DNA of 64,000 bases from Cyanophora paradoxa CCMP329. Taxonomy: Eukaryota; Plantae; Glaucophyta. Of the stretch, positions 11,812 to 62,920 are shown piece by piece. Position 1 is the stretch's first letter. Every line of letters begins with the position of its first letter. The position numbers and the translations under genes are program-made. Below the pieces are notes generated by a model. It was given only the letters and a program-made list of their open reading frames with translations, did not search any database and was not told the DNA's origin. The stretch covers positions 13,341 through 77,340 of the forward strand of contig QPMI01000197.1 of NCBI GenBank assembly GCA_004431415.1, written 5' to 3'.

Positions 11812-13372
11812 GGATCAGGCGAGCGTGGGGCGACCAGGGGGGCGGGTGGGGGCGAGGGCGCGCTCTGTAGTCCACCGGCAGCTCGACCGTCCTGGGGTCG
11901 ACGAGCCACACTGCCGCCCGAGGGTGAGGCGGGGCGGGCGCTTGCAGGGCCCCCAGGGCCCGCGGCACGCACCGGGGAACTTGGGGATGCGCAGCTGGTG
12001 GTGGGCGAACTGCATCTGCGGGGGGGTCAGGAACATCGTCGGCCCGAACGTGAATCGGGGGGTCGCGTCGCGCCTCGTCGTCGCAGTTGTGGGAGCGGAT
12101 GTACCCCGGTGACAGGAAGCAGACATACGTCCGGCAGCGCTGCATCGCCTCCTGCGCATGCCGCGCGCCCCGCGCGCTCGGCATGCTGGAAGGCGCGAGG
12201 CGGTGGGCGACGCGCACCCCGATCTTGGCCATCCACTTCTGGCCCGCCTTGAGCTCGCGGTCGACCCTGCGCGGGGCGAGGGCGTCAGCGGTGCGGGGGC
12301 GGGGGAGGGGGCGAGGGAGAGGGGTGGCCTTGGAGGGGGGCGAACCATATCTTGAAGCCGGCGGCCTCGAGGGCGTCGCAGTAGCGGAAGACGAGCGTCG
12401 CGTCGACGTGGGCGTAGCTGCAGGCGGCGTGAGCACCGGCAGCGTGCGGCGGGGGCCGGGACAAGCGCCTGACGAAGCAGTCCCAGGCCTTGCCGTCGGC
12501 GGCCGGCTGCAGCGGGGGCGGGTGCTGCGGGACTGCAGCAGGCGCCTGCTGGGCGCGCTGGGCGGCCGGCGGGGAGGGCGCCGCTGGGGGACGGGCTCGC
12601 GTCGGGGAAGGGAAGCACGGGCGGGGTACACTGACCGGGGGCCGGAGGGGCCGGGCGGCGGGCGCAGCGGGGCGCGGGGCGGCGGGCGCAGCGGGGCGCG
12701 CGGCAGGGGCGGCGGGCTGCGGTGGCGGGTGAGTGCGCGGTGGAGGCCGAGGGGTAAGGGGCTGGGAGTGGGGCGCACCGCGGGGGCGGGGAGGGAGCGG
12801 AGGTAGGGCACGACGGCGGCGCACTGGGCTGTACCGTCGTACATGTTGTCATTAACGGCGCGGCGGACAAGCTCGGGCCACGAGTCCACGACGGGGTTGC
12901 CGCTCACGTACAGCTCCTGCAGGGCGGCGAGGCGGCCGATCTCCGGCGGCAGCGCCGTGAGCTGGTTGTCACTCACGAGCAGCTCCTTCAGGGCGGCGAG
13001 GCGGCCGATCTCCGGCGGCAGAGCCGTCAGCTGGTTGTCACCCACGTACAGCGTCTGCAGGTTGGCGAGGCGGCCGATCTCGGGCGGCAGCGCCGTCAGT
13101 CGGTTGTCGTTCACGTTCAGCCACCGCAGGGCGGTGAGGCGGCCGATCTCCGGCGGCAGGTCCGTCAGCCGGTTGTTGGTCAACCACAGCTTTTCCAGGT
13201 TCGTCAGCTTGGCGAGCTCGGCCCCCGGGATGCGCGTGAGCTTGTTATAGCCGAGGTCGAGCTCGCGGATGTTCGCCGGCCCCGCTCGCGCGATCTCCGC
13301 CGCCGGCCACTCCGTCCGCCCCTCCTTCTCCAGGTCCAGCTTCCCCTCCGCCGGGATCCACCCCTTGCCCAT
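11812..13372 (-). pseudogene. LRR-TIR receptor copy A (6 LRRs + TIR type 1), interrupted in its last intron by the CACTG transposon
   Basis: ATG at 13372 (MGKGWIPAEG) followed by LPPEIGRL-type 23-aa LRRs. The spliced TIR reads WDCFVSYAHVD...KIWVDRELKAGQKWMAKIGEAMQRCRTYVCFLSPGYIRSHNCDDEMQFAHH. The last exon seen in copies C and E (MMLASVNW...) is absent from the window. Confidence 0.85.
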
Positions 13373-14465
13373 GCCTGCGGGGCGGTCAGCCGCAGAAGCG
13401 CGCCGCGGGGAGCGCGCCCCCGCCCCGCCCGGCGGGTCCCCAGCCTGCGGGGGGCCGCCCGGCCCGCGCTGAGCCCCTCCCGCAGGGGGCGGTGCACGCG
13501 CGCGCCGGGCTCTGCCTTTACCGGCCGCCCCGCCCCGCCCGAGTCGCGGCTCGGGGGAGCGACGGCGGCCTATGGGAGATTGCACCCCCACGCCCGGGCG
13601 CGCGCTGGGTCCTCCCCCCCTCCCCCCGTTCGTGGGTTGGCGAACGAGGCAGCAAGCGACGCCGGAGCGTGGGGCCCCCCCCACAGGCCCGGCCCCGTCG
13701 ACTCGCCCCGCATCTTACCCGACGTCCGCGCGCCCGCCGCGTCGCTTGGTGGGATCAGTGCGGCCCCTCGCACGCTGCTAGGCGACCCGTGCGGCCCAGA
13801 GCGAATTCGAAGCGATTCGTAGATTCTAGACCGGCGGGATCCGCCCAGCGGCAACTAGCGAGCAACCGGCGTTCTGCGCCCGCCCGGAGGAACGCACCTT
13901 CGACGGATCGCCTTGCAGAAGCAGAGCCGAGCTTTCGGAACCGACGGAGCCCGCCCGGTCAGAAATCCTTGCCGGTCGCGTGCTGCCTGCTGGCTGCTCG
14001 CCCGCTGCCCTGTGGAGCTGCGCGCCGGTACAAGCAAGCAATGAGCGAAGGACAGGAGCGATGCCAGAAACCCGTCGGCTTCGCACCTGCCGCGATGAAT
14101 GCCGATTCACCGAAGCGCTTGGGTACGGCCACGCCGAAGCGCCGGGTACGGTCGCGCCGCAGGCCTCCGCTGCTTTCTTGGCAGGCGGGCGGGTCTGTGA
14201 GCTGCATATACCTATAAACGGCGTTCCGGACCGGTGCACTACTGCCCGTCCACTTCATCGTGCGCCAGCCTTCCAGAGCGATCATATGCATGATCAGGAC
14301 GCAGGCGCAGCTGCAGCTGCAGTCATCAAGATGCAGCTGCGCCTGCGCACCGGCAGCTGCCGCCTGGCAGCCGGGCCCGAGGCCATGGCGGAGCAGAGCG
14401 CCGTCCGCGGTGGCGGGTCGACCCGCTCCTCGTTCAGCAGTACTTCTGTAAATCCAGCAGCACTC
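13373..14465. repeat. Shared ~1-kb upstream (promoter/5'UTR) block of the LRR-TIR family, copy A
   Basis: Near-identical to 36997-38195, 56904-57950 and 62921-64000, with shortened versions at 28665-29190 and 42136-42510. CCCCGCAG immediately precedes GCATG, suggesting a 5'UTR intron acceptor. Confidence 0.9.
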
Positions 14466-15215
14466 GGGCCGCCTGGCTGTCCGCCCGCTCGCTTTGGAGC
14501 GAGATCTTGGCATCATCTTGCCCGGCCTGGGGTACAGCCCGCTGTGCAGGCTCCTTCTGATCACGGCTTCAGCGATGCTTCTCTGCGATTTGGTACGCTC
14601 GCGCTCCTTCTCACTCGGCTCCTGTACCGCTCTGATCGCCGAGGCTCGCAGAGCTCGCTTCGCCTCGCGCGCGGCGCCGGCACATGTACGACCGAACACG
14701 CGCGTGCGAGCGGGGGCCTCGCGCCCGGCGGATCGCACACAATCGCCCTCGGTTGCTCGAGCCCCGTCGACCCGCGCGTGCGCGTATGCTTGCGCGCTAC
14801 GAGCACAGCGGCGCCGGCGCGGCCGCGGGCGGCGCGGCGCGGGAGGAGGGCGCGGTGCGGCCGCGGGCGGCGCGGTGGACGAAGAGCCTCGGGCGCGCTC
14901 CGAGCGGCTCGCTCGGACGAGAATCCTGGAGCACGCCTGCGCACTCTTTCTTCTCCACCCAGGCATCAGGCGCACCGCCTCACAAGCGCACCGTCCTGCG
15001 CCGCCTCCGCCAGTGCGTTCGGGACGTGAGGCCGCCCGCCCCGCGCCCGCCCCGCGCCTTTCCGCCCTGCCTCACCCTAGGCCCGCCCCGCCCCGCCCCG
15101 GGCGGCGGGCCCCGCAGATGTTCCGCGCGCTGGCGCGGCTGCCGGCGCTGCGGTCGCTCTGCGCGGACCGGTCGGGCCTCGGGGAGGAGTCCGCGACGCA
15201 CCTGCAGGAGCTGGT

Positions 15216-26521: not shown

Positions 26522-27089
26522 CTCTCTCTAGTACACGAGTGATCCCCGGGGGCGACGTGACTCTAGCGCGATTTCTTGCTCTTCTGTACACTATGGTTTC
26601 GTCCTTATTCTAGTTAGCGTTGTGTCTTATATATTCCGGCATCCCACTGAGCCTGCCCGGCGGCCAAACGTTAACCCGAGCCCCGATCGCGAGCCCGAGC
26701 TACCCTCGCAGTCGATCTCGCCGAAAAACATCGTACAGACAGACTCATGATCAAAGACAGACTCTTAGGCAGCTAGGACAGAACCGCTAGACAAGAATCA
26801 CAATTTGGAAGGACAAATTACGTCCAGCCGCCTGAACAATTCAACCGAATTCGAAGGGAAATCTAAGACTTTGGCGGATGCGGAGCGCCGGGCCTCGCGG
26901 AGGAGGGCTGAAGCACCCGCGGCCTCCTCGAGGAGGGAGGAAGGGGGGAGGGAAGGGCCGGGGAGGGAGGCGGGCCGGAGCCGGGCCCCGCCCGGCGGCG
27001 AGGGGAAGCGAGCGGGCGAGGGCCTGGGGCCGACGGCTTAAGCTTGGCTCGCGGGGGGCGAAGCGGAGCCGGGCGGCCGGGCGGGGCCC

Positions 27090-28664
27090 TCAGCGGCGGG
27101 CGCCCTCCTCGCAGGCCTCGAGCAGGAGCCGGAGGCTGACCCGCCGGAAGGCCGCCTCCGCGCAGCACGGGATCGCCACGCGGGCAAAGACGAGCCGCAG
27201 GTCGGACGGGATCTCCCCCGCTGAGGGGCGATCGAATTCGGTTGGCTGGCGGGGTGGTTCTGGGGCGGGGGCGCACGGGCGGGGAAGCGGCAGGACTTCT
27301 CGTCGTGGAGGAGGACGATGTTCTTCCCCGCCCGCGCCGCGTGCCGCACCTCGCCCAGCACGTACTGGCTCGCCAGCACGTCTGCGCAGCGCAGGGTCCG
27401 AGAAGATCAGACGCCGCCGGGCACGAGAACAGCCGCGCGGACCCTGAGAGATGATGAGGACGACGCTCGCGGAGGCGTCGATGATGTTCTCGAGCCTGCG
27501 GGGCGGGGGGCCGGCCCGGGTGAGAGCGCGGCGAGCACTCCAACTCGAGAGGCGCGCACTGGTGGAGCTCGAGGCGGGAGTCGTCGACGTCGAGGAAGAC
27601 GCGGAGGCCGGGGCGGGCCTGCTCGAGCTGGAGCTTGAGGGCGAGGGCGAGGTGGCCGGCCGAGGACTGCTTGTGCGAGAGGAAGACGTCGTACTGCGTC
27701 GCTGCGGCGGGGGGTGAGGCTTGGGCGGGGCCGGCTGCTCCGGGGTGGTGCACGGACCGGGGGCCGGGGCGGCGGGGCGCACCGCGGGGGCGGAGGCGGG
27801 GAGGGAGCGGAGGGATCCGAGGCGTTCAGGCGTTCAGAGGGGGTTGCCGCTCACGTCCAGCGTCTGCAGACGGGAGAGGCGGCCGATCTCCGGCGGCAGC
27901 GCCGCCAGCTGATTTTTCTCCACGCTCAGCTTCTGCAGGTTGGAGAGGCGGCAGATCTCCGGCGGCAGCGCCGTCAGCTGGTTGTTGCTCACGTACAGCT
28001 CCTGCAGGTTGGAGAGGCGGCCGATCTCGGGCGGCAGCGCCGTCAGCTGGTTGTTGCTCACGTACAGCTCCTGCAGGATGGAGAGGCAGCCGATCTCCGG
28101 CGGCAGCGCCGTCAGCTTGTTGTCGCTCACGTTCAGCCACCTCAGGTCGGCGAGGCGGCCGATCTCCGGCGGCAGCGCCATGAGCTGGTTGCCGCTCACG
28201 CCCAGCACCTGCAGGGCGGCGAGGCGGCCGATCTCGGGCGGCAGCGCCGTAAGCTGGTTGCCGCTCACGCCCAGCGTCTGCAGGTTGGAGAGGCGGCCGA
28301 TCTCGGGCGGCAGCGCCGTCAGCTGGTTGTCGTTCACGTACAGCGTCTGCAGGGCGGCGAGGCGGCCGATCTCCGACGGAAGCGTCGTCAGCTGGTTGCT
28401 CTGCACGTTCAGCCACCTCAAGGCCGCGAGGCGGCCGATCTCCGGCGGCAGGTCCGTCAGCCGGTTGTTGGTCAACCACAGCCACTCCAGGTTCGTCAGC
28501 TTCGCGAGCTCGGCCCCCGGGATGCGCGTGAGCTTGTTCTCGCCAAGCTCGAGCCAGCGGATATTCTCGGGCCCCGCCGCCGCGATCTCCGCCGCCGGCC
28601 ACTCCTCCCGGTCCTTCCCCCCCAGGTCCAGCTTCCCCTCCGCCGGGATCCACTCCTTGCCCAT
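27090..28664 (-). CDS. LRR-TIR receptor copy B (11 LRRs + TIR type 2) with one in-frame TGA between LRR and TIR
   Basis: ATG at 28664 (MGKEWIPAEG). The LRR ORF stops at 27834-27836 but continues in frame as TPERLGSLRSLPASAPA. The spliced TIR reads QYDVFLSHKQSSAGHLALALKLQLEQARPGLRVFLDVDD...LENIIDASASVVLIISQDVLASQYVLGEVRHAARAGKNIVLLHDE...EEGARR*. Confidence 0.8.
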
Positions 28665-29191
28665 GCCTGCGGGGCGGTCAGCGGCAGAAGCGCGCCGCGG
28701 GGAGCGCGCCCCTGCCCCGCCCGGCGGGTCCCCAGCCTGCGGGGGGCCGCCCGACAGCGCCATAGCACGCTTATAGGCGCCCCGCGCGGCCCAGAGCGAA
28801 GCGATTCGAATTCGTTGGTTCTAGACCGGGATCCCCCCAGCGGCAACTAGCAAGCAATCCAGGCCATGCGCCCGCCCTGAGGAGCGCACCTTCGACGGAT
28901 CGCCTTCCCGCAGAAGAGCCGAGCTTTCGGAACCGACGGAGCCCGCCCGGTCAGAGATTCCTTGCCGGTCGCGCGCTGTCTGCTGGCTGCTCGCCCGCTG
29001 CTCTGTGCAGGGAGCTGTGAGCGAACGAGAGGCGAGCGATGCAAGAAACCCGTCGGCTTCGCACCTGCCGCGATAAACAACGCCTACACCGCCGTAACAC
29101 CGAGGCCCTCTGCGGCGTCGGTACGTACACGCCGTTCTCGGCCGTCCGAGGCCGTCCGAGGCCCGGAGGCCGAAGCGCCGGGGTACGGGGT

Positions 29192-32714: not shown

Positions 32715-32748
<34 letters not shown>

Positions 32749-35341: not shown

Positions 35342-36996
35342 CTAGCGCCGCAGAAAGTCGCGCAGGCCGGCGACGAGCTCGCCGGCCGCCGCGTCCGCCG
35401 CCGCCGCCCCCTCCCCGCGCTGCATCGTCCAGTTCACCGACGCCAGCATCATCTGCCGCCGTCCGCGGATCAGGCGAGCGTGGGGCGACCAGGGGGGCGG
35501 GTGGGGGCGAGGGCGCGCTCTGTAGTCCACCGGCAGCTCGACCGTCCTGGGGTCGACGAGCCACACTGCCGCCCGAGGGTGAGGCGGGGCGGGCGCTTGC
35601 AGGGCCCCCAGGGCCCGCGGCACGCACCGGGGAACTTGGGGATGCGCAGCTGGTGGTGGGCGAACTGCATCTGCGGGAGGGTCAGGAACATCGTCGGCCC
35701 GAACGTGAATCGGGGGCCGCGTCGCGCCTCGTCGTCGCAGTTGTGGGAGCGGATGTACCCCGGCGAGAGGAAGCAGACGTACGCCCGGCAACGCTGCATC
35801 GCCTCCTGCGCCCGCCGCGCACCCCGCGCGCTCGGCATGCTGGAAAGCGCGCGGCGGTGGGCGACGCGCACCCCGATCTTGGCCATCCACTTCTGGCCCG
35901 CCTTGAGCTCGCGGTCGACCCTGCGCGAGGCGAGGGCGTCAGCGGTGCGGGGGCGGGGGAGGGGGCCACGGAGAGGGGTGGCAATGGAGGGGGGCGAACC
36001 TTATTTGGAAGCCGGCGGCCTCGAGGGCGTCGCAGTAGCGGAAGACGAGCGCCGCGTCGACGTGCGCGTAGCTGCACGGCGGCGTTAGAGCCGGCGGCGT
36101 GCGGTGGAGGCCGGGCAACGCGCCTGACGAAGCAGTCGCAGGCTTTGCCGTCGGCCGCCGGCTGCAGCGGGGGCGGGTGCTGCGGGACGGCAGCAGGCGC
36201 CTGCTGGGGACGCTGGGCCGCGGGCGGGGAGGGCGCCGCTGCGGGGCGGGCTCGCGTCGGGGGAAGGGAAGCACGGGCGGGGGTACACTGACCGGGGGCC
36301 GGAGGGGCGCGTGCGGCGGGGGCGGCGGGCTGCGGTGGCGGGTGAGTGCGCGGTGGAAGCCGAGGCCGGGGCCGGGGTGAGTGCGCGGTGGCGAGGGGCG
36401 GGGCCGGGTGCCGGGGCGGCGGGGCGCACCGCGGGGGCGGGGGCGGGGAGGGAGCGGAGGTATGCGAGGCGTTCAGCCGTGTTCTTCTTCTTGAGGAGCT
36501 CCGGCATGGCCGTGAGGGGGTTGCCGTCCACGTACAGCACCTTCAGGGCGGCGAGGCGCCCGATCTCCGGCGGCAGCGCCGTCAGCTTGTTGCCGCGCAC
36601 GTCCAGCGCCTGCAGGATGGAGAGGCGGCCGATCTCGGGCGGCAGCGCCGTCAGCTGGTTGTTCTCCACCCAAAGCCCCTGCAGGGCGGCGAGGCGGCCG
36701 ATCTCCGGCGGCAGCGCCGTCAGCTGGTTGCCATCCACGTTCAGCACCTTCAGGGCGGCGAGGCGGTCGATCTCCGGCGGCAGCGCCGTCAGCTGGTTGC
36801 TCTGCAACCACAGCTTCTCCAGGTTCGTCAGCTTCGCGAGCTCGGCCCCCGGGATGCGCGTGAGCTTGTTATAGCCGAGGTCGAGCTCGCGGATGTTCGC
36901 CGGCCCCGCCGCCGCGATCTCCGCCGCCGGCCACTCCGTCCGCCCCTCCTTCTCCAGGTCCAGCTTCCCCTCCGCGGGGATCCACCCCCTGCCCAT
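35342..36996 (-). CDS. LRR-TIR receptor copy C (6 LRRs + TIR type 1), apparently intact
   Basis: ATG at 36996. Linker exons splice in frame. The TIR reads CDCFVSYAHVD...YVCFLSPGYIRSHNCDDEMQFA...MMLASVNW...RDFLRR*. Confidence 0.88.
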
Positions 36997-38195: not shown

Positions 38196-40615
38196 GACGA
38201 ATCATGAGCGAAGTTCTGGTCGCCGCGGCGCCGGCTCCGGCGAACGGGGCGCGGGAGAGGCTCGAACCAGCTCGATGCTCGCCGGCACCGCGGCGCCGCG
38301 CGGCCTGCTGATGCACATGGGCGCACGCGTGCACGCAGGCGCCGTCCAACGACGCTTTACCCGTTGACGCAGTGCATGCCTGCAGTCGCGGCTCCCGCGG
38401 CCAGCGCCCCGGCGCCCCGCGCGAGCTGCAGCGCGCCTCTCGGGGCCCCGCGGCGGATCTGCGGGCGCCCGGTCCCGCCCCGCCGGACCGCGGACTGGAG
38501 ACCTCTCCGCGCGCCCCTCGCCCGTCGCCGCGGCGCGGCCCTCGCCCCGCCCCCGCCCCCGCCGCCCGCGCAGCGCAGCGCCCCGCCGCCCGCCAGTCCC
38601 CGCCGGGCGCCCTCCCCGAAGGGCCGCGTTCGCCCCCGGCCCGCCCCGCCCCGCCCCGCCGCGCGCCTCGAATCCCCTTCCCGCCCTCCCTCGGACGCCT
38701 CGCGCGCCCCCGTACCCCACCCCGCAGGCCCTTCGAGCCGGGCGCCGGCGCCCCTTCGCACGGGCCGGCCCTTCGGATCCCCCGCCTTCCTCCCGGGGAT
38801 CGAGGCGAGCCCCGCCCTCCCCGCGCTTCTTCTGAGGCTTCATCTCGGCTTCATCTCAGGCTCACCTGAACATGAGATCAGGCCCGGCCCGAGGACGCCG
38901 TCCAGTCGGCGGCGCCCGCCGCCCGCCGCCCGCCGCCCGCCCCCGGCCCGCCTTCCCTCCCTCCGAGGCTCCTCGATCCGAGGAGAGTGGGCGCCCGCCC
39001 CGTACCCCCCGACCCCTCTCCTTCGCGGCCCCAAGCCTGCCTCGCCCCCTTCTCCCGGGCCTCGAGGTGGGCCCCCTCCTCCCTCCCCTCCCCTCCCCTC
39101 CCCCCCCCCCCTCCCCCGTCTTTAACCCCCGCCTTACCCCCGCGGTCTCGCCCACTTGCCCTCGCCCCCGCAGATCGCAGGCGTGTGGCGCGGGATATCC
39201 CTACCCCCCCCTTCCCCCCCGGGGCCGCCCGCCCTCCCCCCGTCCAGCTCCCTCCCTCCCTCCCTCCGCGGCGGACCGCCTGCCGCCCGCACGGGCGCCC
39301 CTCCTGCGCCATCGGGCCGCCCGGCCTCGCCCCCCGCTCGCCCCCCCTCCGCCCCCGGGCCCCTGGCTCGGGGCCGTCTGAGCCGTCTGAGCCGTCTGGG
39401 CCGTCTTCATCCGCCCCCGTTTCTCCTCTCCCTCGCGCTGTCCCCGCCCCGCCCCGCCCCGCCCCGCCTCTCGCATAGGCCGCCCCTCTCTTCGCCCCCT
39501 CCTCCGAGGATCCCTCGCAACCGGCCCCCCCTTCGGCCCTCCGCCCCGGCCCGGCCCCGGCCCCGGCCCGGCCTCCGGCCTCGCGGGCCGCGCCGAGGCC
39601 TCTAGATCTGGCGGTGGATCGAGGGCGGGCGCCGGCTCCCTCCCCTCCGCGCCCTCGCTTCCGAGTCCTTCCTCCACGCCGCCTCCCCGCCGGCGCCTCC
39701 CGGCCCCGCCCGTCCCCGCCCCCCGGACTCCGGACTCCGGGAGGACCCCGGCCCGGGAACCTGCAGTTCATTGTTGCAGTTGGACCCGGGACTCGTACCT
39801 GATTACTAAGTCACTAGCCTAGTAGCCATGGTCATGATCACGAGCGCTTGTCCCTTTCAGTGATCATGACTGTCCGGATCCATATGCACGTGATCGTGAC
39901 GTCAACATGTACAGGCCTCGGGCCTTGAAGCACAAACCGTCGAACTATGCACCGCGGCACAGATGTGCAGGGCTCCCGAGGCCTGATCATGAGCCCCGGG
40001 GGCTCGGAGTTCATTGCAGTGCAATAACTCCAGCCTGGCAGAGATCTAGACTCGTATGCATGCCGCGCTGCATGATCATAATCAGGGCCTTGCTATGACT
40101 ATGAGGCTCTTTGTAGCTCCGCGGCCTAGTACTACGCGGGCCTCGGGAGCCCCGAGAGCACCCGCGGCCTCCTCGAGGGGGCGGGGGAGGGGAGAAGGGC
40201 GGGGGAGGGGGGGAGGAGGACAGAGAGGAGGTACAGGGAAATACTTCCGAAAATTCGACTCAAATCTCGACTCAACTGAATCACTCAACCCAAGAGAAAG
40301 ACTTCTGAAGACTAGAGCAAAGAAGAAAGACAAGTACGAACTCAAGCAGGTCAGGCTCAGGGCTGGGAGCCAGGTGCGCAGGGCCGGGCCGGGTCCGTGG
40401 GGCGGGCGGGCGGGGCCCTCAGCGGGCGAGAAGGGCGGGAGGTTTGGGGGGGGAGGGGAGGAGGAGAGGGCCCTCCAGGGGACCCGGCGCGCCGCGCGGG
40501 GCGGGGCGGAGGCGGAGGCGCCGACGGCGGGCGGGGGGAAGCGAGCGAGCGACGGCCTGGGGCCGACCGGAACGAGGCGGGAAGCGGGGCGGAGGCGGGC
40601 GGGGCCTCGGGGCCC

Positions 40616-42135
40616 TCAGGGGCGGGCGCCCTCGTCGCGGGACCCGCCGGAAGGCCGCCTCCGCGGGCGGGCAAAGACGAGCCGCAGGTCGGACGGGATC
40701 TCCGCGGCTGTGGGGCGATCAAATTTCGAGGTTCGGTTGGCTGGTAGAGCGACCTAGGCCTGGGGCGGGGGCGCACGGGCGGGAAAGCACGTAGTGGCTC
40801 GCCAGGACGTCTGCGCAGCACGGGGCCGGGGAAGATCAGGCGCCGCCAGGCACTAGAACAGCCGAGCGGACCCTGGGAGATGATGAGGACGACGCTCGTG
40901 GAGGCGTCGATGATCTTCTCGAGCCTGCGGGGCGGGGGGCCGGCTCGGGTGAGAGCGCGGCGAGCACTCCAGCTCAGAGGGGCGCACTGGTGGAGCTCGA
41001 GGCGGGAGTCGCCGGCGTCGAGGAAGACGCGGAGGCCGGGGCGGGCCTGCTCGAGCTGGAGCTTGAGGGCGAGGGCGAAGTGCCCCGCCGAGGACTGCTT
41101 GTGCGAGAGGAAGACGTCGTACTGGGCCGCTACGGCGGGGCGTGAGGCGGAGGGGCGGAGGGGCCGGCTGCTCCGGAGATGATGCACGGACCGGGGGCGG
41201 GCTGCGGCGAGGGGTGAGGAGCGGGGCGCGGGGGACGGGGCGGCGGGGCGCACCGCGGGGGCGGGGGCGGGGAGGGAGCGGAGGTATGCGAGGCGTTCAG
41301 GCGTTCAGAGGGGATTGCCGCTCACGTCCAGCGTCTGCAGACGGGAGAGTCGGCCGATCTCCGGCGGCAGCGCCGCCAGCTGATTTTTCTCCACGCTCAG
41401 CTTCTGCAGGTTGAAGAGGCGGCAGATCTCCGGCGGCAGCGCCGTCAGCTGGTTGTTGCTCACGAGCAGCTCCTGCAGGCTGGAGAGGCGGCCGATCTCC
41501 GGCGGCAGCAACGTCAGCTGGTTGTTGCTCACGTACAGCTCCTGCAGGGCGGCGAGGCGGCCGATCTCCGGCGGCAGCGCCGTCAGCTGGTTGCTCTGCA
41601 CGTTCAGCCACCGCAGGGCGGCGAGGCGGCCGATCTCCGGCGGCAGCGCCGTGAGCTGGTTGCTACCCACGCCCAGCGTCTCCAGGGCGGCGAGGCGGCC
41701 GATCTCCGGCGGCAGCGCCGTGAGCTGGTTGCCGCTCACGCCCAGCGTCTGCAGGTTGGAGAGGCGGCCGATCTCGGGCGGCAGCGCCGTCAGCTGGTTG
41801 TCGTTCACGTACAGCGTCTGCAGGGCGGCGAGGCGGCCGATCTCCGACGGAAGCGTCGTCAGCTGGTTGCTCTGCACGTTCAGCCACCTCAGGGCGGCGA
41901 GGCGGCCGATCTCCGGCGGCAGGTCCGTCAGCTGGTTGTTGGTCAACCACAGCCACTCCAGGTTCGTCAGCTTGGCGAGCTCGGCCCCCGGGATGCTCGT
42001 GAGCTTGTTCTCGCCAAGCTCGAGCCAGCGGATGTTCTCCGGCCCCGCCGCCGCGATCTCCGCCGCCGGCCACTCCGTCCGGTCCTTCCCCCCCAGGTCC
42101 AGCTTCCCCTCCGCGGGGATCCACTACTTGCCCAT
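40616..42135 (-). pseudogene. LRR-TIR copy D (11 LRRs + TIR type 2), pseudogene
   Basis: ATG GGC AAG TAG gives a stop at codon 4 (GAG in copy B). It has the same post-LRR TGA as B (41305-41307). The TIR lacks the GEVRHAARAGKNIVLLHDEKSCR segment, including the putative catalytic Glu. Confidence 0.85.
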
Positions 42136-55035: not shown

Positions 55036-56903
55036 TCACTGTACGCTGCAGGACTTCTCTTCCTCCGCGGGAGCGGCGGCGCTGGGGCCGGGGCGGGGGC
55101 CGGGAAGGGAGCTCCCGTGCCGCAGGAAGTCGCGCAGGCCGGCGACGAGCTCGCCGGCCGCCGCGTCCGCTGCGGCTGTCCCCTGCCCCCGCTGCATCGT
55201 CCAGTTCACCGACGCCAGCATCATCTGATGGCGAACGTGAGCTGAAGTCGGGAAAACGCAGGGTTCGGGCAGCGACGTGGGCGCCGGCGCGCCCTGTAGT
55301 CGACTGGTAGCTCGACCGACTTGGGGTCCACGAGCCACACTGCCGCCCGAGAATGAGGCCGGGCGAAGGGTGCGGGGCGGGCCGGCAGGCAGGCACCGGG
55401 GAACTTGGGGATGCGCAGCTGGTGATGAGCGAACTGCATCTGCTGGGGGATCAGGCACGGAAGCCTAGCCCTGGATCGGGGCGGGGGGCTGCGGCGCGCC
55501 TCGTCGTCGCAGTTGTTGGAGCGGATGTACGCTGGCGAGAGAAAGCAGACGTACGTCCGGCAGCGCTGCATCGCCTCCTGCGCATGCCGCGCGCCCCGCG
55601 CGCTCGGCATGCCGGAAGGCGCGAGGCGGTGGGCGACGCGCACCCCGATCTTGGCCATCCACTTCTGGCCCGCCTTGAGCTCGCGGTCGACCCTGCGCGG
55701 GGCAAGGGCGTCAGCGGAGCGGGGGCGGGGGAGGGGGCGAGGGAGAGGGGTGGCCTTGGAGGGGGGCGAACCATATTTTGAAGCCTGCGGCTTCGAGAGC
55801 GTCGCAGTAGCGGAAGACGAGCGCCGCGTCGACGTGGGCGTAGCTGCAGGCGGCGTGAGCACCGGCAGCGTGCGGTGGAGGCCGGGACAAACACCTCACG
55901 AAGCAGTCCCAGGCCTTGCCGTCGGCGGCCGGCTGCAGCGGGGGCGGGTGCTGCGGGACTGCAGCAGGCGCCTGCTGGGGGCGCTGGGCGGCCGGCGGGG
56001 AGGGCGCCGCTGCGGGGCGGGCTCGCGTCGGGGGAAGGGAAGCACGAGCGGGGGTACACTGACCGGGGGCCGGAGGGGCGCGTGCGGCGGGGGCGGCGGG
56101 CTGCGGTGGCGGGTGAGTGCGCGGTGGAAGCGAGGGGCGGGGCCGGGTGCCGGGGCGGCGGGGCGCACCGCGGGGGCGGGGGCGGGGAGGGAGCGGAGGT
56201 AGGGCACGACGGCGGCGAGCTGGGCTTCACCATCATACTCGTTCTCGTTGACGGCGCGGCGGACGGCGGGCCACGAGTCCACGACTGGGTTGCCATCCAC
56301 GTGCAGGTACTTCAGGGCGGCGAGGCGGCCGATCTCCGGCGGCAGCGCCGTCAGCTGGTTCTTGCTCACGTACAGCTCCTTCAGGGCGGCGAGGCGGCCG
56401 ATCTCCGGAGGCAGCGCCGTCAGCTGGTTGCCGCTCACGTCCAGCGTCCGCAGAGCGGAGAGGCGGCCGATCTCCGGCGGCAGCGCCGTCAGCTGGTTGT
56501 CACTCACGAGCAGCTCCTTCAGGGCGGCGAGGCGGCCGATCTCCGGCGGCAGCGCCGTCACCTGGTTGTCGCGCACGAACAGCTGCTGCAGGTTGGAGAG
56601 GCGGCCGATCTCCGGCGGCAGCGCTGTCAGCCGGTTGCTGCTCACGCCCAGCGCCTGCAGGGCGGCGAGGCGGCCGATCTCCGGAGGCAGCGCCGTCAGC
56701 TGGTTGTCGCTCAAGTACAGCTTTTCCAGGTTCGTCAGCTTGGCGAGCTCGGCCCCCGGGATGCGCGTGAGCTTGTTCCCGTCGAGGTCGAGCACGCGGA
56801 TGTTCGCCGGCCCCGCCGCCGCGATCTCCTTCGCCGGCCACTCCGTCCGCCCCTCCTCCTCCAGGTCCAGCTTCCCCTCCGCCGGGCTCCACCCCTTGCC
56901 CAT
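55036..56903 (-). CDS. LRR-TIR receptor copy E (8 LRRs + TIR type 1), apparently intact
   Basis: ATG at 56903 (MGKGWSPAEG). In-frame splicing leads to WDCFVSYAHVD...YVCFLSPAYIRSNNCDDEMQFA...MMLASVNW...SCSVQ*. Confidence 0.88.
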
Positions 56904-57950
56904 GCCTGCGGGGCGGTCAGCGGCAGAAGCGCGCCGCGGGGAGCGCGCCCCCGCCCCGCCCGGCGGGTCCCCAGCCTGCGGGGGGCCGCCCGGCCCGCGC
57001 TGAGCCCCTCCCGCAGGGGGCGGTGCACGCGCGCGCCGGGCTCTGCCTTTACCGGCCGCCCCGCCCCGCCCGAGTCGCGGCTCGGGGGAGCGACGGCGGC
57101 CTATGGGAGATTGCACCCCCACGCCCGGGCGCGCGCTGGGTCCTCCCCCCCTCCCCCCGTTCGTGGGTTGGCGAACGAGGCAGCAAGCGACGCCGGAGCG
57201 TGGGGCCCCCCCCACAGACCCGGCACCAACAACTCGCCCCGCATCTTAGCCAACGTCCGCGCGCCCGCCGCGTCGCTTGGTGGGATCAGTGCGACCCCTC
57301 GCACGCTGCTAGGCGACCCGTGCGGCCCAGAGCGAATTCGAAGCGATTCGTAGATTCTAGACCGGCGGGGTCCGCCCAGCGGCAACTAGCGAGCAACCGG
57401 GGTTCTGCGCCCGCCCGGAGGAGCGCACCTTCGACGGATCGCCTTGCAGAAGCAGAGCCGAGCTTTCGGAACCGACGGAGCCCGCCCGGTCAGAAATCCT
57501 CGCCGGTCGCGCGCTGCCTGCTGGCTGCTCGCCCGCTACTCTGTGCAGGGAGCCGCGCGCCGGTACAAGCAAGCAGTGAGCGAACGACAGGCGAGCGATG
57601 CCATAAACCCGTCGGCTTCGCACCTGCCGCGATGAATGCCGATTCACCGAAGCGCGGGGGTACGACCACGCCCTGGCACGCCGAAGCGCCGGGGTACGGT
57701 CGCGCCGCCGGGTCGCGGGCCTCTGCTGCTTTCATGGCGGGCGGGCGGGTCTGTGAGCTGCATATACCTATAAACGGCGTCCCGGACCGGTGCACTACTG
57801 CCTGTCCACTTCAACATGCGCCAGCCTTAATTGCAGAGCGATCATGATCAGGACGCAGGCGCAGCTCTGCAGCCATCAAGACGCAGCTGAGCAGGCGCAC
57901 CGGCAGCTGCAGCCTGGCAGCCGGGCCCGAGGCCATGGCGGAGCACAGCG
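56904..57950. repeat. Shared upstream block, copy E
   Basis: Near-identical to the blocks upstream of A, C and F. Confidence 0.9.
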
Positions 57951-57997: not shown

Positions 57998-58079
57998 CAC
58001 TAGTAAAAAGGGGGTCGCCGGATCCAGCCTGATATAAATCAGGCTGAAACAGGCTCCGGCGACCCCCCTTCTACTAGTG
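57998..58079. mobile_element. 82-bp non-autonomous mini-CACTA (MITE-like) with 3-bp TSD
   Basis: CTC|CACTAGTAAAAAGGGGGTCGCCGGA...TCCGGCGACCCCCCTTCTACTAGTG|CTC, with ~25-bp TIRs and an internal hairpin CAGCCTGAT-ATAA-ATCAGGCTG. Confidence 0.92.
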
Positions 58080-60943
58080 CTCCGGATCCGGCGATCGGGA
58101 CCGTCGGACCGGACGCGGGCAGCCTGCAGCTGCGGCTCCGGGATCCCATGCTCGATCGAAACACGATCGGAGTTTCTGGTCGCGCACTGCCGCAGCTCCT
58201 TCTGGCCGCCTGCCGTGCACTGCGCGCGCGCGAGCGAGCGAGAGAGGGAGATTGTCTCCTCCGCCCTCCTCCGCCCCGCCTAAGAAGGTGCGCCGGCTGC
58301 GTGCGCGCGCGCCGGCGAACGCCTCCCGTACGCGTGTCGGCGGCGGCGGCCCCCGACTGCTTCCACCGCGTCTTCATGGACGTGCGCCCTCGCGCCCGCC
58401 GCCCCGCCCCGCCCCGCCCCGCCCCGCCCCGCCGCCACGGCTCCCTCGCCCGCTCCTGACGGCGCCGCCCCGCCCGCCTCGTCGCCGGCAGCGCTCCACG
58501 CCCGTCACGTGAGATCCCGCCCGCCGGCGCGCTCCGCCCACCCGCCGGCGCCTGACCGCCGAGCGCGCAGCAGGGACGGCCCGCGGCGCGGCGCCCGCGC
58601 TCCCCGCGTGGCGCCGGCGGCGACCGGGGCGGGCGGGCGGGCGGGCGGGGGCGGGGTTCGAGCAGTAGGATAGATGCGAGGGAGCTAGGTCCCTTGCGGG
58701 TGTGGCGGAGGCGCTAGGCGAGCTTCCGTTTTAGAGGCGGTGGCGTCCCCCGTTCTCGAGGCGCGGAAATGCGCGCACCTCGCGGGGCGGGCGGGCGGGG
58801 GCGCGGCTGGCCCCGCCGCTCCATCGTCGCCCGCGCCGGCCACGCACGCCGCCAGAGGTCTGCCGCCCGCGCGCCCGCCCTGCGCCCGCCTCGTGCCGCC
58901 CTCGCCGGTACCGGGCGCCGGCGCGGAGGACGGCGCCGCCCGCCGAGCGCCGGCGCGGGCGAGCGGGTGCGCATGCGCGCCGGCGCGCCCCCACCCTCTC
59001 CCACGCCTGACTGCGGCGCCCCCGCCGGGGGCCGGGCAGCTGGAAGAGCGTTCCCCTCGAGAGGAACGGTGGGCGCCGCGCCCGCTGCGGAGGAACGCTC
59101 CTCCGCGGCCTCGAGCCGAGCTCAAAGGGCCCTCACGGGGGCCGCCCCTCCCCCCTCCCGCCCGGGCCCCGGGCGCTCCCCCCGCCCTCCCCTCGCCGCT
59201 CCTGCGGCGGCGCCGCCTCAACGCCGCCCCGCCCCCGCCTTCGATCGAGCTCTCCCCGGCCGCCCGCCTCGAAGGTGCGCGGCCGGCGGCTGGGCCGGAG
59301 GCGCCTTCCGCGAGCCTCGCGAGCGCGTCGCTCGCAGAGGCGGCGGCCCCGCAGGCGGCGGGCGGGGCGGCGGGGCGGCGCGCGGTGGAGCGGGGCGAGC
59401 GGTGGGCGCCGCCGCTCGCCCCGCCGCCCTCGACGGGCGACGCGCGGGGGCCAGCCCTGCGGGGGTACAGGTGGCCCTCGGGGGCGCCGGGGCCGGCCTC
59501 GCCGGCGGCCCGGGCTCCCCGGCCTCCCTGGAGCGGGAGGAGGGGGGCCCGGGGCCCGGGGCCCGGAGCCCGGGCCGGCGGGGCGCCCCTGGGCCTCGAG
59601 GCCCTCGCCCTCGTCGCCGTCGGCGGCAGCGGTGCGCCCGCCCCGCCCGCCCCCGCCCCCGCCCCCGCCTTTGCGGGCCCTTCCCCTCTTCTTCTTCTTC
59701 CGCTTCGAGGGTCGGAGGGAGGTCCACCCGCCGCCCCTCCCCGCGCCCCTCTCCGCCCCGCCCGCTGCCCTCCGCGGGCCGCCCCGGGCCCCCCGCCCGC
59801 CACAGCTCCTCCCGGGCTGTCTCTTGGCCCGCCCCTTCAGCCCCGCTCCGCGCCGGATCCGCCGCGGGCCGCCGGCCGGCCGGCCGCCTCCCCGCCCCTC
59901 CTCCTCTACCCTCCGAGCCCGAGCTCCCGTACCCCCGCCCCGCAGGCCTCGTCCCCTCCCTCGTACTTTCCCCCTCCCTCGCCGCCTCCTTCCCCCAAGG
60001 CCGACCCCCGCCGAGCCTCTGACGAACCGAGGAGGGGATCCGGAGCTCGATCGCGAGGGTCGGAGGGGCGAGCGGCACTGGAGCGCGCTGCACGGCCGGC
60101 GGAGCTAGCTAGAGCTTTGCAAGCCATCACTGATATTGAGAGAAGTTCTCTAATGTACGAGAGAGCGCTGGAGCTGCCATCGGGCCCCAGGGCGCGGGCG
60201 GAGGGGGCGCCCCGAGCCCGCCCCTCGCCGCGGCCTCCCTCCTCCCCGGCCCGCCGCAGCTCAACCCCCTCGGTCCCCCCCGACAGCACAAACACTCTGG
60301 CTGGGGCGCAAGCATCTCGGGCGCTGGGGCTGCCAGTGATCGCTTGAAAAAGGCCCCGGACAGATCAGATCCGATAGTGAACATAGTGCCGAACATAGTG
60401 CTGAGGCGGAAGCGGGGGGGGGGGGGGGGGGGGGCGCGGGGGGGCGGAGGAGAATTCGAAGGGGAGGGACGAGGGTTGCGCATGCGCACAGTCCCCTTGC
60501 CTCCTTCCCTCCCCTGCTACCCCCCTTTCTTAACCCCATCCCCCCCGGCCCCCTCGGGGGGAGCCTGTAATGCAACTCTTTTTGATGATTACAGGCTTCA
60601 CGCCGTGACAAGACAATGCGAAAGAATAAATACTAGCACTTCATAAAAAACGATGATCCTTTCGTATTTAAAAAGTAGAACTTGCTGAATCGTAGCTAAC
60701 TGCAAATTGCTAGAAGTAAGCCTCGGCCTTTCAGATGAGATGCATGACACAGCACATGGACTAGAATCCGATGATCAGGACCAGCACTTTGCAATGAGAG
60801 GCGTACTGAAAGAAGCAGTAGTAATTGCAACTTTTTGAGGCTCCAAAGGCCAACTTCTGACCCGACCGAGCTCGGACGCTGCGGGCGTCCGGGACGGCGA
60901 GGCCGGGCGAGGGCCGAAAGATGATCTGCGGGTGGCCGCCGGC

Positions 60944-62920
60944 CTACGCGAGCGGCGGCGGGAGCGACTCGTACGGCTGCGGATGTTGTCAGCGGTGGGC
61001 GAGGGGGGTGGGGAAGGGGTGGAGGGCGGACGGGGACGGCGGCGACGGCGGCGTCGATGAGGGCGCAGAGTTTCGCGAAAGACGCCTGCTGGTACATGTT
61101 ACTGAAGAAGACCGCTGAGGGCAGCCCCGGGACGCGGCGTCAGCGGCGCGCGGGGCGGGCGCCGCGGCTGCGCCGAGCGCGGCGGGGCGGACCGTTGTGG
61201 CTCGAGAAGGCGGCCATGTCGGCGGGGAGGCCGTCGCAGGCGGGGAACTTCTCGTTTGGGTCGTCCACGAAGGGGATGATGGCCTTGCGCAGGTACAGGC
61301 TCATGACGACCTCCTTTCGGACCCTGCGCCGCGCCCCGCGGGGTGGCTTGGCTTGCGGGGCCGCCGGGGGGGGCGGACGGCACCAGTCGGTGGAGAGGGC
61401 GGCCGAGGGGGCCTTGTCTTCGAAGCAGCGGTCCAGGGTCCCCGGCGTGAGCACGAAGACTGCGCCCGGGCGTCAGGAGGAAGGCGGGCGAGGCGGGGGC
61501 CGCCGGCGGGACGCGCCGTCGCAGCAGGAGCGGCGGAGGCTCTCGAGGATTTTCGGGCCGAAATTGCCGCCCTGGAGGCTCTGCAGGTCGTAGAAGACCT
61601 TGTAGCTGCCGCAGTTTCAGGCGTGGAAGGGCGCGAGGCTGGCGCGTGTGGCCGCACCCGATCTTGTCGAGTGCCTCGCGCACGAGCGCCGCGAGGAGGT
61701 TCTTCTTGTCCTTGTCCGACCGCCGGTACGTGATGCTGCGCGACCTCAGGGGCGAGCGAAAGGAGCGCGGAGGAGGCAAGGCGGCGCACAAGGCGTGGAA
61801 CTCGTAGCCGGGGGGCAGCGGCGGGGCGCGCCGGGCGGCGGCGCTCTGCGGGCGGGCCCGGGGCGCGTTCGGCGCCGCGCTGGCGAGGCCGTGCTCCCTC
61901 GCGAGATCGGAAATCTACAGCTGCGTCAGGTAGGTCCGAGGGAGGGGCGGGTGGCGGGGAGGGAGGTGTGCCTTTAGGAGCAGGTTGCGGCGGACGAGGC
62001 CCGACTCGACGCCGAGCTCCTCGCGCAGATCGCCGTCGGTGAGGGTGAGGAGGACCTGCCCGTCGACGGCGCAGCCCTCGAAGGCCGGGGCCAGCCTGCC
62101 GAGGTCGAGGGACCGGAGCCACTCGCAGACGTCGGCCACGCGCATGCCCCGCGGGTCCTTCGCCGCCGCCGCGGGGGCGGGCACTGCCGGCGCGGGCGCC
62201 GCGGCGGGCGAGGCCGAAGGGGCGGCGGCCGCAGGGAGGCTGCGCGCTGTCGTCGGGAGGCGGGAAGGCGCGGGCGGGGCGTGCGCGGACCGGGGGTTGA
62301 AGGGCCGGGGCGGCGGAGGGGCGCGGGCGGGGGCGGGGCGGGGCGGGCTGCAGCGCGGGGTGAGAGGCGGGGCGCGGGGGCGGGGCGGCGGGGCGCACCG
62401 CGGGGGCGGGGGCGGGGAGGGAGCGGAGGTAGGGCACGACGGCGGCGCACTGGGCTTTACCGTCGCTGCGGTTCTCGTTGACGGCGCGGCGGACGGGCTC
62501 GGGCCACGATTCTAGCTGCTGTACCCACAGCTGCTGCAGGGCGGCAAGGCGGCCGATCTCCGGCGGCAGCGCCGTCAGCTGGTTGTCACCCACGTACAGT
62601 GTCTGCAGGGCGGCGAGGCGGCCGATCTCCGGCGGCAGCGCTGTCAGCTGGTTAAAGCTCACGTCCAGCACCTGCAGGGCGGAGAGGCGGCCGATCTCCG
62701 GCGGAAGCGCCGTCAGCTGGTTGCTCTGCAACCACAGCTTCTCCAGGTTCGTCAGCTTGGCGAGCTCGGCCCCCGGGATGCGCGTGAGCCTGTTCCCGTC
62801 GAGGCGGAGCCAGCGGATGTTCTCCGGCCCCGCCGCCGCAATCTCCGCCGCCGGCCACTCCTCCCGCCCCTCCCACCCCAGGTCCAGCTTCCCCTCCGCC
62901 GGGATCCACCCCCCGCCCAT
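60944..62920 (-). CDS. LRR-SAM-TIR receptor copy F (4 full + 1 partial LRR, SAM, SARM1-like TIR)
   Basis: The SAM reads MRVADVCEWLRSLDLGRLAPAFEGCAVDGQVLLTLTDGDLREELGV. The spliced TIR reads HAFITYRRSD..LLAALVREALDKIGYKVFYDLQSLQGGNFGPKILESLRRSCCDVFVLTPGTLDRCFED..DWVRKEVVMSLYLRKAIIPFVD..LPADMAAFSSHNAVFFSNMYQQASFAKL. The linker exon (~62291-62347) needs a 1-2 nt indel in its C-runs to join frames. Confidence 0.82.

What the first reader, a model, noticed from the sequence alone, without database searches (positions are those of the whole stretch)
11812..62920. Modular family of six cytosolic LRR-TIR receptors: one shared promoter+LRR cassette coupled to three different TIR effector modules
Seen: six - strand paralogs (ATGs at 13372, 28664, 36996, 42135, 56903, 62920) share an upstream block and an intronless LRR exon ending LRSLPAxA|GTGCG. 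Downstream of that point they carry unrelated intron-rich modules: TIR type 1 (A, C, E), TIR type 2 (B, D) or SAM+TIR type 3 (F). No signal peptide, TM helix or NB-ARC/NACHT domain is visible. Known: TIR domains with the alphaC Glu are NAD+-consuming immune enzymes in SARM1, plant TNLs and bacterial Thoeris, and the LRR-then-TIR order is TLR-like but normally has a TM between the domains. Inference: a protist/algal innate immune receptor system in which a variable sensor cassette is shuffled onto alternative enzymatic effectors, with birth-and-death turnover (2-3 intact copies, the others disabled).
Basis: partly seen in the sequence, partly recalled or inferred. Interest (0 to 1): 0.92.

Follow-up and report, generated by a model that had tools for sequence, protein, structure and literature searches.

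The report
Algal LRR-TIR receptor gene cluster
A 50-kb stretch of the glaucophyte alga Cyanophora paradoxa holds six tandem copies of a soluble leucine-rich-repeat "sensor" joined to three very different TIR "NAD-cutting" modules, one closely resembling the human axon-death enzyme SARM1, which looks like an undescribed innate-immune-type receptor family built by module swapping.

Summary
Six minus-strand paralogs (ATGs 13372, 28664, 36996, 42135, 56903, 62920) share a 5' block and one long LRR exon that ends at the same LRSLPA..PA|GTGCG donor.

The window is Cyanophora paradoxa contig tig00000841. Public BRAKER models g4721, g4726, g4730, g4736 and g4738 already join LRR to TIR.

All three downstream modules pass Pfam TIR_2 and keep the alphaC Glu:
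- Type 1 (A, C, E) resembles TLR and bacterial Tir domains.
- Type 2 (B, D) is a divergent SARM1-like TIR.
- Type 3 (F) is SAM+TIR, matching human SARM1 at E = 5e-29.

No signal peptide, TM helix or NB-ARC/NACHT was found.

- The "promoter" block contains an RNA-supported 5'UTR exon and leader intron.
- Inside the window, the 5'-block trees are congruent with TIR type.
- Evidence for shuffling comes from the genome-wide family. Both LRR cap variants occur with all three TIR types, and type-2 monophyly on the N-cap tree is rejected.
- C and E are intact. F is probably intact, but its LRR-SAM junction is unresolved. B has one TGA, D has three lesions, and A lost its last TIR exon.

Immune function and NADase activity are inferred. 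The scan had already noted this LRR-SAM-TIR family on other pieces of the same genome.

The parts
11812..13372 (-). Gene A (tig00000841_g4721), coding part: LRR exon 13372-12779, then linker and type-1 TIR exons down to about 11876. It is 3'-truncated and lacks the last TIR exon. The Glu codon is at 12076-12074.
13900..14100 (-). Gene A 5'UTR exon (3' end at 13900, ..CGTCGAAG|GTGCG). The leader intron is 13899-13375. The upstream end of the exon was not mapped.
27093..28664 (-). Gene B (g4726): LRR exon 28664-27783 with 11 repeats and an in-frame TGA at 27836-27834 in a shortened cap. Type-2 TIR exons are 27699-27559, 27494-27444, 27382-27278 (Glu 27352-27350) and 27218-27093.
35345..36996 (-). 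Gene C (g4730): LRR exon 36996-36430 with the short cap variant, then type-1 TIR exons down to the stop at 35345. The Glu codon is at 35730-35728. Uninterrupted.
40357..42135 (-). Gene D: pseudogene of the B type. It has TAG at codon 4 (42126-42124), TGA in the cap (41307-41305) and a 71-nt deletion that removes the Glu-bearing part of the TIR-2 exon.
55039..56903 (-). Gene E (g4736): LRR exon 56903-56169 with 8 repeats and the long cap, linker exons 56100-56065 and 56010-55897, and type-1 TIR exons down to 55039. The Glu codon is at 55502-55500. The protein ends in CSVQ. Uninterrupted.
60947..62920 (-). Gene F (g4738): LRR exon 62920-62399, SAM exon 62238-61972, and type-3 (SARM1-like) TIR exons 61914-60947. 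The Glu codon is at 61313-61311. RNA contigs support introns 61915-61971 (GC-AG), 61735-61791, 61323-61382 and 60977-61031. The LRR-to-SAM junction is unresolved.
62923..63470 (-). Gene F leader intron. The 5'UTR exon ends at 63471. Equivalent 5'UTR exon ends lie at 13900, 28892, 37521, 42335 and 57431.
   Evidence: RNA-run contigs break at 62924 and continue with 16 letters that match 63471-63486 and the paralogous sites.
56904..57950 (-). Shared 5' block of gene E (leader intron, 5'UTR exon, presumed promoter). It is 91-92% identical to the blocks of A and F and 85% identical to that of C.

Best explanation
This is a tandem, birth-and-death cluster of a Cyanophora paradoxa gene family encoding soluble, NOD-less LRR-TIR proteins.

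Gene structure. Each gene has a short 5'UTR exon and a leader intron. One long intron-free exon follows, encoding an N-cap, 4-11 23-residue LRRs and a C-cap. Next comes a Pro/Ala-rich linker on mini-exons, then a TIR domain split over 5-7 small exons.

Sensor. Variation among the LRRs is concentrated at the x positions of LxxLxLxxN, the predicted concave face, on an otherwise near-invariant scaffold.

Effectors. The same 5' cassette (84-92% nucleotide identity between copies) is attached to three deeply diverged TIR modules: a TLR/bacterial-Tir-like one, a divergent SARM1-like one, and a SAM+TIR that is a clear homologue of the SARM1 SAM-TIR module. All three keep the catalytic-position Glu.

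Inferred action. Ligand binding on the LRR releases or clusters the TIR (through SAM in F). The clustered TIR then cleaves NAD+ or makes a nucleotide signal, giving a defence or cell-death output.

Inferred evolution. New sensor-effector combinations arise by ectopic recombination or gene conversion in the GC-rich, low-complexity linker and within the LRR exon. Copies are then duplicated segmentally and frequently decay.

Shown: architecture, folds, the conserved Glu, mosaic ancestry, transcription and splicing of F's 3' part and of the leader, and the lesions in A, B and D. Inferred: ligand sensing, NADase activity and an immune role.
For: - Organism and public models.
- Exon maps of the five models on the window.
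- LRR and SAM hits by exon. TIR_2 above the gathering score in all five models.
- PDB sequence matches: T1 to the TLR15/TLR2 chain at 2.9e-6 and to BtTir at 4e-5; T2 to the SARM1 TIR at 2e-5; F's SAM+TIR to human SARM1 at 4.7e-29, and its TIR alone at 4e-20, with DWVRKEVV aligned to SARM1's DWVHKEIV.
- The Glu is invariant in both alignments.
- AF2 models: T2 has pLDDT 90 and its best PDB matches are SARM1 TIR domains at TM 0.74-0.86. T1 has pLDDT 73 and matches BtTir, RUN1, PdTIR and TLR2 at TM 0.5-0.67.
- No TM-like segment.
- LRR positional entropy.
- Mosaic ancestry.
- Genome-wide reassortment: the short and long caps each occur with T1, T2 and T3. T2 monophyly on the N-cap tree is rejected at p-AU 8e-5 and 0.003 after removing mis-modelled rows.
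- Other Cyanophora partners of the same TIR types are SAM, WW, ZZ and RING.
- RNA: spliced contigs in X1, X2 and X5 versus unspliced contigs in X18. In addition, 5 X1 and 2 X2 contigs break at 62400, one base from the shared donor.
Against: - No RNA contig bridges an LRR exon to a TIR or SAM exon in this window.
- For F, the shared donor at 62399 combined with the annotated exon-2 acceptor would break the frame. The public model instead uses a donor at 62453.
- Trees of the 5' block inside the window are congruent with TIR type. The six local copies therefore need only two old module replacements plus whole-gene duplication.
- Exposed-position variability in the LRRs can be neutral; positive selection was not tested.
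- T1 most resembles scaffolding TIRs (TLR, MyD88), so it may not be an enzyme.
- T2 lacks the SYRR and DWV motifs of SARM1.
- Three of the six copies are damaged.
- No pathogen, ligand or phenotype is known.
Confidence: 0.6

Rival explanations
1. Concerted evolution rather than effector shuffling. On this view three anciently separate LRR-TIR gene lineages exist, and their 5' halves (leader, LRR exon, start of linker) are repeatedly homogenised by gene conversion among neighbours. The cassette only looks 'shared' as a result. The molecular process, ectopic recombination, is the same, but no new sensor-effector combinations are being created on purpose.
For: Within the window, the 5'-block topology matches TIR type. 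Identity between 5' blocks is uniformly 84-92% and the tree is star-like. Copy C's cap looks like a short conversion tract from a B/D- or P0121-type donor.
Against: The same TIR types also occur with SAM, WW, ZZ or no partner, and the LRR cassette also occurs with RING. This points to real domain recombination. Conversion tracts that stop in the linker give the same outcome: one sensor sequence attached to different effectors.
Confidence: 0.3
2. The proteins are real LRR-TIR fusions, but they act in non-immune signalling. Candidate roles are stress- or light-linked NAD+ metabolism, regulated cell death, or protein scaffolding. The copy-number turnover would then be neutral.
For: No ligand or pathogen is known. 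T1 resembles adaptor-type TIRs. In animals SARM1 itself acts in axon degeneration as well as in immunity (established knowledge). Half of the local copies are decaying.
Against: Three features are typical of recognition receptors: tandem expansion with birth and death, variability confined to the LRR concave-face positions, and combinatorial effector use. The Glu is retained in every type.
Confidence: 0.22
3. Gene-model artefact. The LRR exon and the TIR exons would be separate adjacent genes that the predictor (and the reader) fused across GC-rich, stop-poor DNA.
For: The LRR-to-TIR junction was not bridged by RNA here. The genome paper warns that the models need curation (PMC6704402). B and D end their LRR ORF with a stop.
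Against: The same order, strand and donor occur at six loci here and in at least 15 further models on at least 8 other contigs. RNA-run contigs break one base from the donor, whereas the DNA run's contigs break at 62417 instead. The downstream modules have no start or leader of their own. Metagenomic LRR-then-TIR proteins encoded in a single ORF also exist.
Confidence: 0.06

Closest known systems
SARM1 / TIR-1 (animal SAM-TIR NAD+ hydrolase)
   Same: F's SAM+TIR matches human SARM1 at E = 4.7e-29, and its TIR alone at 4e-20. Identity to animal SARM1 TIR domains is about 33-37%. The YRR and DWV.KE motifs, including the catalytic-position Glu, are shared. The type-2 TIR also finds the SARM1 TIR as its best match, by sequence and by fold.
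   Different: The N-terminal regulator is an LRR array, not an ARM domain. There is one SAM, not two. Cyanophora T3 TIRs form their own clade, and a sister relation to animal SARM1 is not resolved.
Plant TIR-NB-LRR (TNL) and TIR-only immune proteins
   Same: An intracellular TIR with the alphaC Glu is combined with LRRs. The genes lie in tandem clusters with birth-and-death turnover. RUN1 and RPP1 TIR domains are among the fold matches.
   Different: There is no NB-ARC. The domain order is reversed (LRR at the N-terminus, TIR at the C-terminus). The LRR is the 23-residue SHOC2/ROCO-like type.
Toll-like receptors
   Same: The order is LRR then TIR, and the T1 TIR's best solved-structure sequence match is a TLR15/TLR2 TIR chain.
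   Different: There is no signal peptide or TM helix. The LRR is cytosolic and short. A Pro/Ala linker stands where the membrane span would be.
Prokaryotic or metagenomic soluble LRR-TIR and TIR-LRR proteins
   Same: These are single-chain LRR+TIR_2 proteins without NB-ARC. Both domain orders exist (P0032, P0074 and P0113 are LRR then TIR; P0042, P0054 and P0070 are TIR then LRR). The LRR type is the same.
   Different: They are not close relatives: the LRR regions are 40-54% identical. They lack the Cyanophora N-cap, C-cap and P/A linker. No function has been described for them as far as I know.
Brown-alga LRR-ROCO and NB-ARC-TPR candidate receptors with exon shuffling (PMC3341825, PMC11378527)
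   Same: These are algal, cytosolic, LRR-based candidate receptors that diversify by recombining gene parts.
   Different: There the individual LRR exons are shuffled and the effector is a ROC-COR GTPase. Here the LRR array is one exon and the effector (TIR type) is what differs.

Membership tests
TIR domain (Pfam PF13676 TIR_2 / PF01582 TIR) | Profile match above the curated gathering score | tested here: met
   TIR_2 scores are 67.6 (A), 63.5 (C), 70.9 (E), 31.1 (B) and 29.1 (F) bits against a cut-off of 28. B and F pass only narrowly.
TIR domain | Flavodoxin-like alternating beta-alpha TIR fold | tested here: met
   The T2 model (pLDDT 90) matches the SARM1 TIR at TM 0.74-0.86. The T1 model (pLDDT 73) matches BtTir, PdTIR, RUN1 and TLR2 at TM 0.5-0.67. 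T3 was not folded and rests on sequence alone (E = 4e-20). The T2 alignment contained SARM1-like sequences, so that model is not fully independent.
TIR NADases (SARM1, plant TIRs, bacterial TIRs) | Catalytic Glu in the alphaC region | tested here: met
   The Glu is invariant in alignment A1 (T2, T3, animal SARM1 and bacterial TIRs) and in A2 (T1, NCDDE). It also aligns to the SARM1 KE motif. Codon positions are given.
TIR NADases | NAD+ cleavage activity that depends on that Glu | not testable with these tools
   This needs an enzyme assay.
SARM1 orthologue | N-terminal ARM autoinhibitory domain | tested here: not met
   Pfam finds LRR families only upstream of the SAM.
SARM1 orthologue | Two tandem SAM domains | tested here: not met
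   There is a single SAM_1/SAM_2 hit, at residues 209-269 of the F model. It aligns to either SARM1 SAM domain.
Toll-like receptor | Signal peptide and a single TM helix between LRR and TIR | tested here: not met
   The maximum 19-residue Kyte-Doolittle mean is 0.8-1.57, and the N-termini are charged. This was a simple hydropathy scan, not a dedicated predictor.
NLR / TNL | Central NB-ARC or NACHT NTPase | tested here: not met
   There is no such Pfam hit in any of the five models.
LRR (Pfam LRR_8, LRR_4, LRR_14) | Tandem LxxLxLxxN repeats above the gathering score | tested here: met
   LRR_8 scores 88-160 bits and LRR_14 scores 104-186 bits on the exons by reference. The 23-residue units are stacked.
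Thoeris ThsB-type TIR | ThsB_TIR profile match and a ThsA partner | tested here: not met
   None of the window's models has a PF08937 hit. No ThsA-like neighbour was looked for.

The most novel reading that the evidence does not exclude
Cyanophora may run a NOD-less, combinatorial innate-immune repertoire. In it a hypervariable cytosolic LRR cassette is recombined, through a GC-rich Pro/Ala linker, onto alternative TIR NADase effectors, one of which is a SARM1-type SAM-TIR. That would be an independent LRR-TIR immune system at the base of the Archaeplastida. It would also show that the SARM1 SAM-TIR death module works with a pathogen-type sensor outside animals.
Probability: 0.3. Interest if true: 0.85.

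Novelty: new variant of a known kind. Interest (0 to 1): 0.62.

Why it matters
TIR NADases are a shared currency of immunity in bacteria, plants and animals, but how sensors became wired to them in early eukaryotes is unclear. A glaucophyte family that couples LRRs directly to TIRs, with no NB-ARC and no membrane span, would give a minimal sensor-effector design to test. It also contains a SAM-TIR 33-37% identical to animal SARM1 TIR domains. That bears on whether the SARM1 module is older than animals or was acquired horizontally. The family further offers a natural experiment in effector swapping. I found no paper describing it, and the genome paper does not mention TIR. The gene models themselves are already public.

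Tried and rejected
- Exon-by-exon Pfam gave only weak TIR hits. The public whole-gene models were needed.
- My first tblastn exon map failed on the repeats and was replaced by exact mapping.
- Read laying (one call, 58001-64000) confirmed four F introns and the leader intron but did not bridge LRR to SAM. Joints 62396>62482 and 61848>61990 and the 62210>62371 record look like paralog cross-mapping. I did not use them.
- The word-based homolog searches for T3 and T1 returned only Cyanophora proteins. The exhaustive search was needed to see outside relatives.
- The 159-sequence TIR tree could not place Cyanophora T3 relative to animal SARM1.
- In-window tree incongruence was looked for and not found.
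- Pfam on ORFs of the low-GC block and of neighbouring genes gave nothing.
- N-myristoylation was considered. All copies start with MG, but position 6 is Ile and position 7 is Pro in most, so I judged it unlikely. Only E has Ser at position 6.
Exons were searched by reference, and whole-protein work used the stored public models.


Full report
**What is in the sequence**

From about 11.8 kb onward the window is 65-80% G+C. The first 11.8 kb are 43-51% G+C.

They encode near-identical N-termini (MGKGWIPAEGKLDL...) followed by 23-residue LRRs. Each runs into the same LRSLPA(P/S)APA|GTGCGCCCC donor. Self-BLAST shows 84-92% nucleotide identity over the LRR exon plus 0.4-1.5 kb upstream. Downstream of the LRR exon, A, C and E align with each other, B and D align with each other, and F aligns with neither group beyond about 235 nt past the donor.

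**Organism and existing annotation**

I searched with the F ORF, scoring its LRR part only. This returned EukProt proteins tig00000841_g4721, g4726, g4730, g4736 and g4738, which are 99-100% identical to the window. Their accessions name Cyanophora paradoxa (EP00741).

The genome paper (PMC6704402) describes BRAKER1/Augustus models, 67.6% GC and a mean of 9.2 introns of 86 bp per gene. It says nothing about TIR. Four literature searches found no description of Cyanophora LRR-TIR or SARM1-like genes. Earlier notes of this scan, including one follow-up, had already flagged an LRR-SAM-TIR family on other pieces of the same genome.

**Domains**

Searched by reference, the LRR exons hit LRR_8, LRR_4 and LRR_14 strongly, and F's 62448-61918 frame hits SAM_1 and SAM_2. 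Single TIR exons are too short to score. The public models pass TIR_2's gathering score in all five genes, B and F only just. None has NB-ARC or NACHT.

Against solved structures, the three TIR types behave differently:
- Type 1 (E) is nearest to a TLR15/TLR2 TIR chain (2.9e-6) and to the bacterial BtTir (4e-5).
- Type 2 (B) is nearest to the SARM1 TIR (2e-5).
- Type 3 (F), taken as SAM+TIR, matches full-length human SARM1 at 4.7e-29 and the isolated TIR at 4e-20. FITYRR aligns to FISYRR and DWVRKEVV aligns to DWVHKEIV.

The Glu at this position is invariant in an alignment of T2, T3, animal SARM1 and bacterial relatives. It is also invariant in all ten T1 sequences, as NCDDE. AlphaFold models give a confident TIR fold for T2 (pLDDT 90; SARM1 TIR TM 0.74-0.86) and a moderate one for T1 (pLDDT 73; BtTir, PdTIR, RUN1 and TLR2 at TM 0.5-0.67).

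The three types are mutually very distant: 28% identity over 74 aa, 29% over 41 aa, and no hit. No 19-residue window is TM-like, and the N-termini are charged.

**Gene structure and RNA**

Exact mapping of the models gives 5-10 exons per gene, with 55-110-nt GT-AG introns that often begin GTGCG.

X1, X2 and X5 therefore behave as RNA and X18 as DNA. For F the following introns are supported:
- 60977-61031, in three runs from two studies.
- 61323-61382.
- 61915-61971, a GC-AG intron.
- 61735-61791, through a loose end.

A loose end at 62924 continues with 16 letters that occur at 63471 and at the equivalent place upstream of every paralog. In each case they are followed by AG|GTGCG. The "shared promoter block" therefore contains a 5'UTR exon and a leader intron, whose acceptor lies 2 nt before the ATG. 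The intron is about 525-550 nt in A, C, E and F and about 200-225 nt in B and D.

The LRR-to-downstream junction was not bridged. Five X1 contigs and two X2 contigs do break at 62400, one base from the shared donor, and continue with unlike sequence. I read these as paralogs running into their own next exons. The DNA run's contigs break at 62417 instead.

For F the public model uses a different donor (62453). The shared donor combined with the annotated 58-nt exon 2 would shift the frame. Joining the shared donor straight to the SAM exon (62238) would stay in frame. This is unresolved.

**State of the copies**

| Copy | State | Evidence |
|---|---|---|
| C | Uninterrupted (372 aa) | |
| E | Uninterrupted (454 aa); ends in CSVQ | |
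| F | Intact in the public model; LRR-SAM junction open | |
| B | One in-frame TGA in a shortened C-cap; TIR exons intact | |
| D | TAG at codon 4, the same TGA, and a 71-nt deletion removing LGEVRHA...; dead | |
| A | Homology to C ends at 11812, about 10 nt before the acceptor of the last TIR exon; lacks the last helix | |

In A the break coincides with the start of the low-GC block.

**Is the cassette shuffled?**

Inside the window, trees of the ATG region (295 nt) and of the 1-kb upstream block both give ((B,D),(F,(E,(A,C)))). This is congruent with TIR type. The six local genes therefore need only whole-gene duplications after two module replacements.

The replacements themselves are not in doubt. 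F and E upstream blocks sit on end branches of 0.012-0.018 substitutions per site, while their C-terminal modules are unalignable as DNA.

Similarity between T1 genes and F continues through intron 1, mini-exon 2 and intron 2, and fades inside the Pro/Ala-coding exon 3. Similarity to B and D fades 20-60 nt into intron 1. The joints thus lie in the GC-rich low-complexity linker.

There is recombination beyond this:
- Copy C has an A-like 5' part and a T1 module. Its C-cap, however, is the short variant (GNPLTAMPELLKKKNTAERLAYLRSL), which B and D carry in deleted form. A, E and F have the long variant (GNPVVDSWPE...AQCAAVVPYLRSL).
- Genome-wide, both cap variants occur with all three TIR types.
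- An N-cap tree rejects monophyly of T2-linked cassettes, with p-AU 8e-5, and 0.003 after dropping mis-modelled rows. T3 gives 0.024. T1 is not rejected.
- The same TIR types are also joined to SAM, WW, ZZ or nothing, and the LRR cassette is also joined to a RING finger.

**The sensor**

Across 41 stacked repeats, entropy is 1.5-3.0 bits at positions 1, 3, 4, 6, 8 and 9. These are the x positions of LxxLxLxxN. Entropy is at most about 1 bit over NQLTALPPEIGRL. Copies have 4 to 11 repeats. This is the pattern of recognition LRRs, but selection was not tested.

**Relatives outside Cyanophora**

An exhaustive HMMER search with F's TIR found Cyanophora paralogs first. After them came 35-45% identical TIRs from bacteria (Clostridia, Verrucomicrobia, Sel1-TIR proteins) and animal SARM1 (annelid, thrips, Bos, fluke) at similar scores. 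In a 159-sequence tree, Cyanophora T3 and T2 each form a starred clade, and their placement relative to animal SARM1 is unresolved. Soluble LRR-then-TIR and TIR-then-LRR proteins exist in metagenomes.

**Verdict**

The locus is a real, transcribed, tandemly duplicated LRR-TIR family in Cyanophora, with three TIR effector types that include a SARM1-type SAM-TIR. The architecture and mosaic ancestry are well supported. Module exchange is shown genome-wide rather than within this array. The immune/NADase mechanism is a reasonable inference, not a result.

I did not build or search my own joined spliced sequences. Exons were searched by reference, and whole proteins were the stored public models.

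Noticed in passing
window 1-11811: A low-GC block (43-51% G+C, against 65-80% in the rest of the window) abuts gene A exactly where A's homology to C ends, and it replaces A's last TIR exon. It contains a 360-bp tandem repeat of 2.7 copies (10201-11161, 98% identical), a 15-bp repeat of 5.9 copies (11619-11707) and an 89-nt G-run (9662-9750). ORFs there have no Pfam hit. It could be a transposon, a repeat island or an assembly joint.
   Followed up: partly
window 15216-17869 vs 24132-26525; 32077-35101 vs 43153-45963: Neighbouring non-LRR sequence is duplicated together with the LRR-TIR genes at 75-92% identity. The array therefore grew by segmental duplications of several kb (B plus its neighbours copied to D plus its neighbours).
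   Followed up: partly
window 21948-22655: A perfect (100% identical) 355-bp direct tandem duplication, 21948-22302 and 22301-22655.
   Followed up: no
window 55039-55060 (C-terminus of gene E): The E model ends in ...KSCSVQ. Paralogs on other contigs (P0053, P0124) end in the same CSVQ, a CaaX-like box that could mean prenylation and membrane tethering. The lead came from earlier scan notes. Only the presence of the motif was checked.
   Followed up: partly
window 28667-28891: The public model of gene B starts at an upstream ATG (28763) that lies inside what RNA evidence from the paralogous leader indicates is the 5'UTR intron. Its 33-residue N-terminal extension is therefore probably not translated.
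   Followed up: partly
window 61915-61971: A GC-AG intron in gene F is supported by spliced contigs in two RNA-like runs.
   Followed up: yes
window 58000-60600: An 80% G+C stretch lies between E and F. It has RNA-run joints of its own (for example 59372>59479 and 59586>59724), which points to another transcribed gene. I did not identify it.
   Followed up: no
other Cyanophora contigs (P0101, P0124, P0125, P0126, P0129, P0131): The same TIR types and the LRR cassette occur in other combinations: LRR+RING, SAM+TIR3+TIR3, ZZ+SAM+TIR3, TIR3+2xWW and SAM+TIR1. Two different SAM variants are used.
   Followed up: partly
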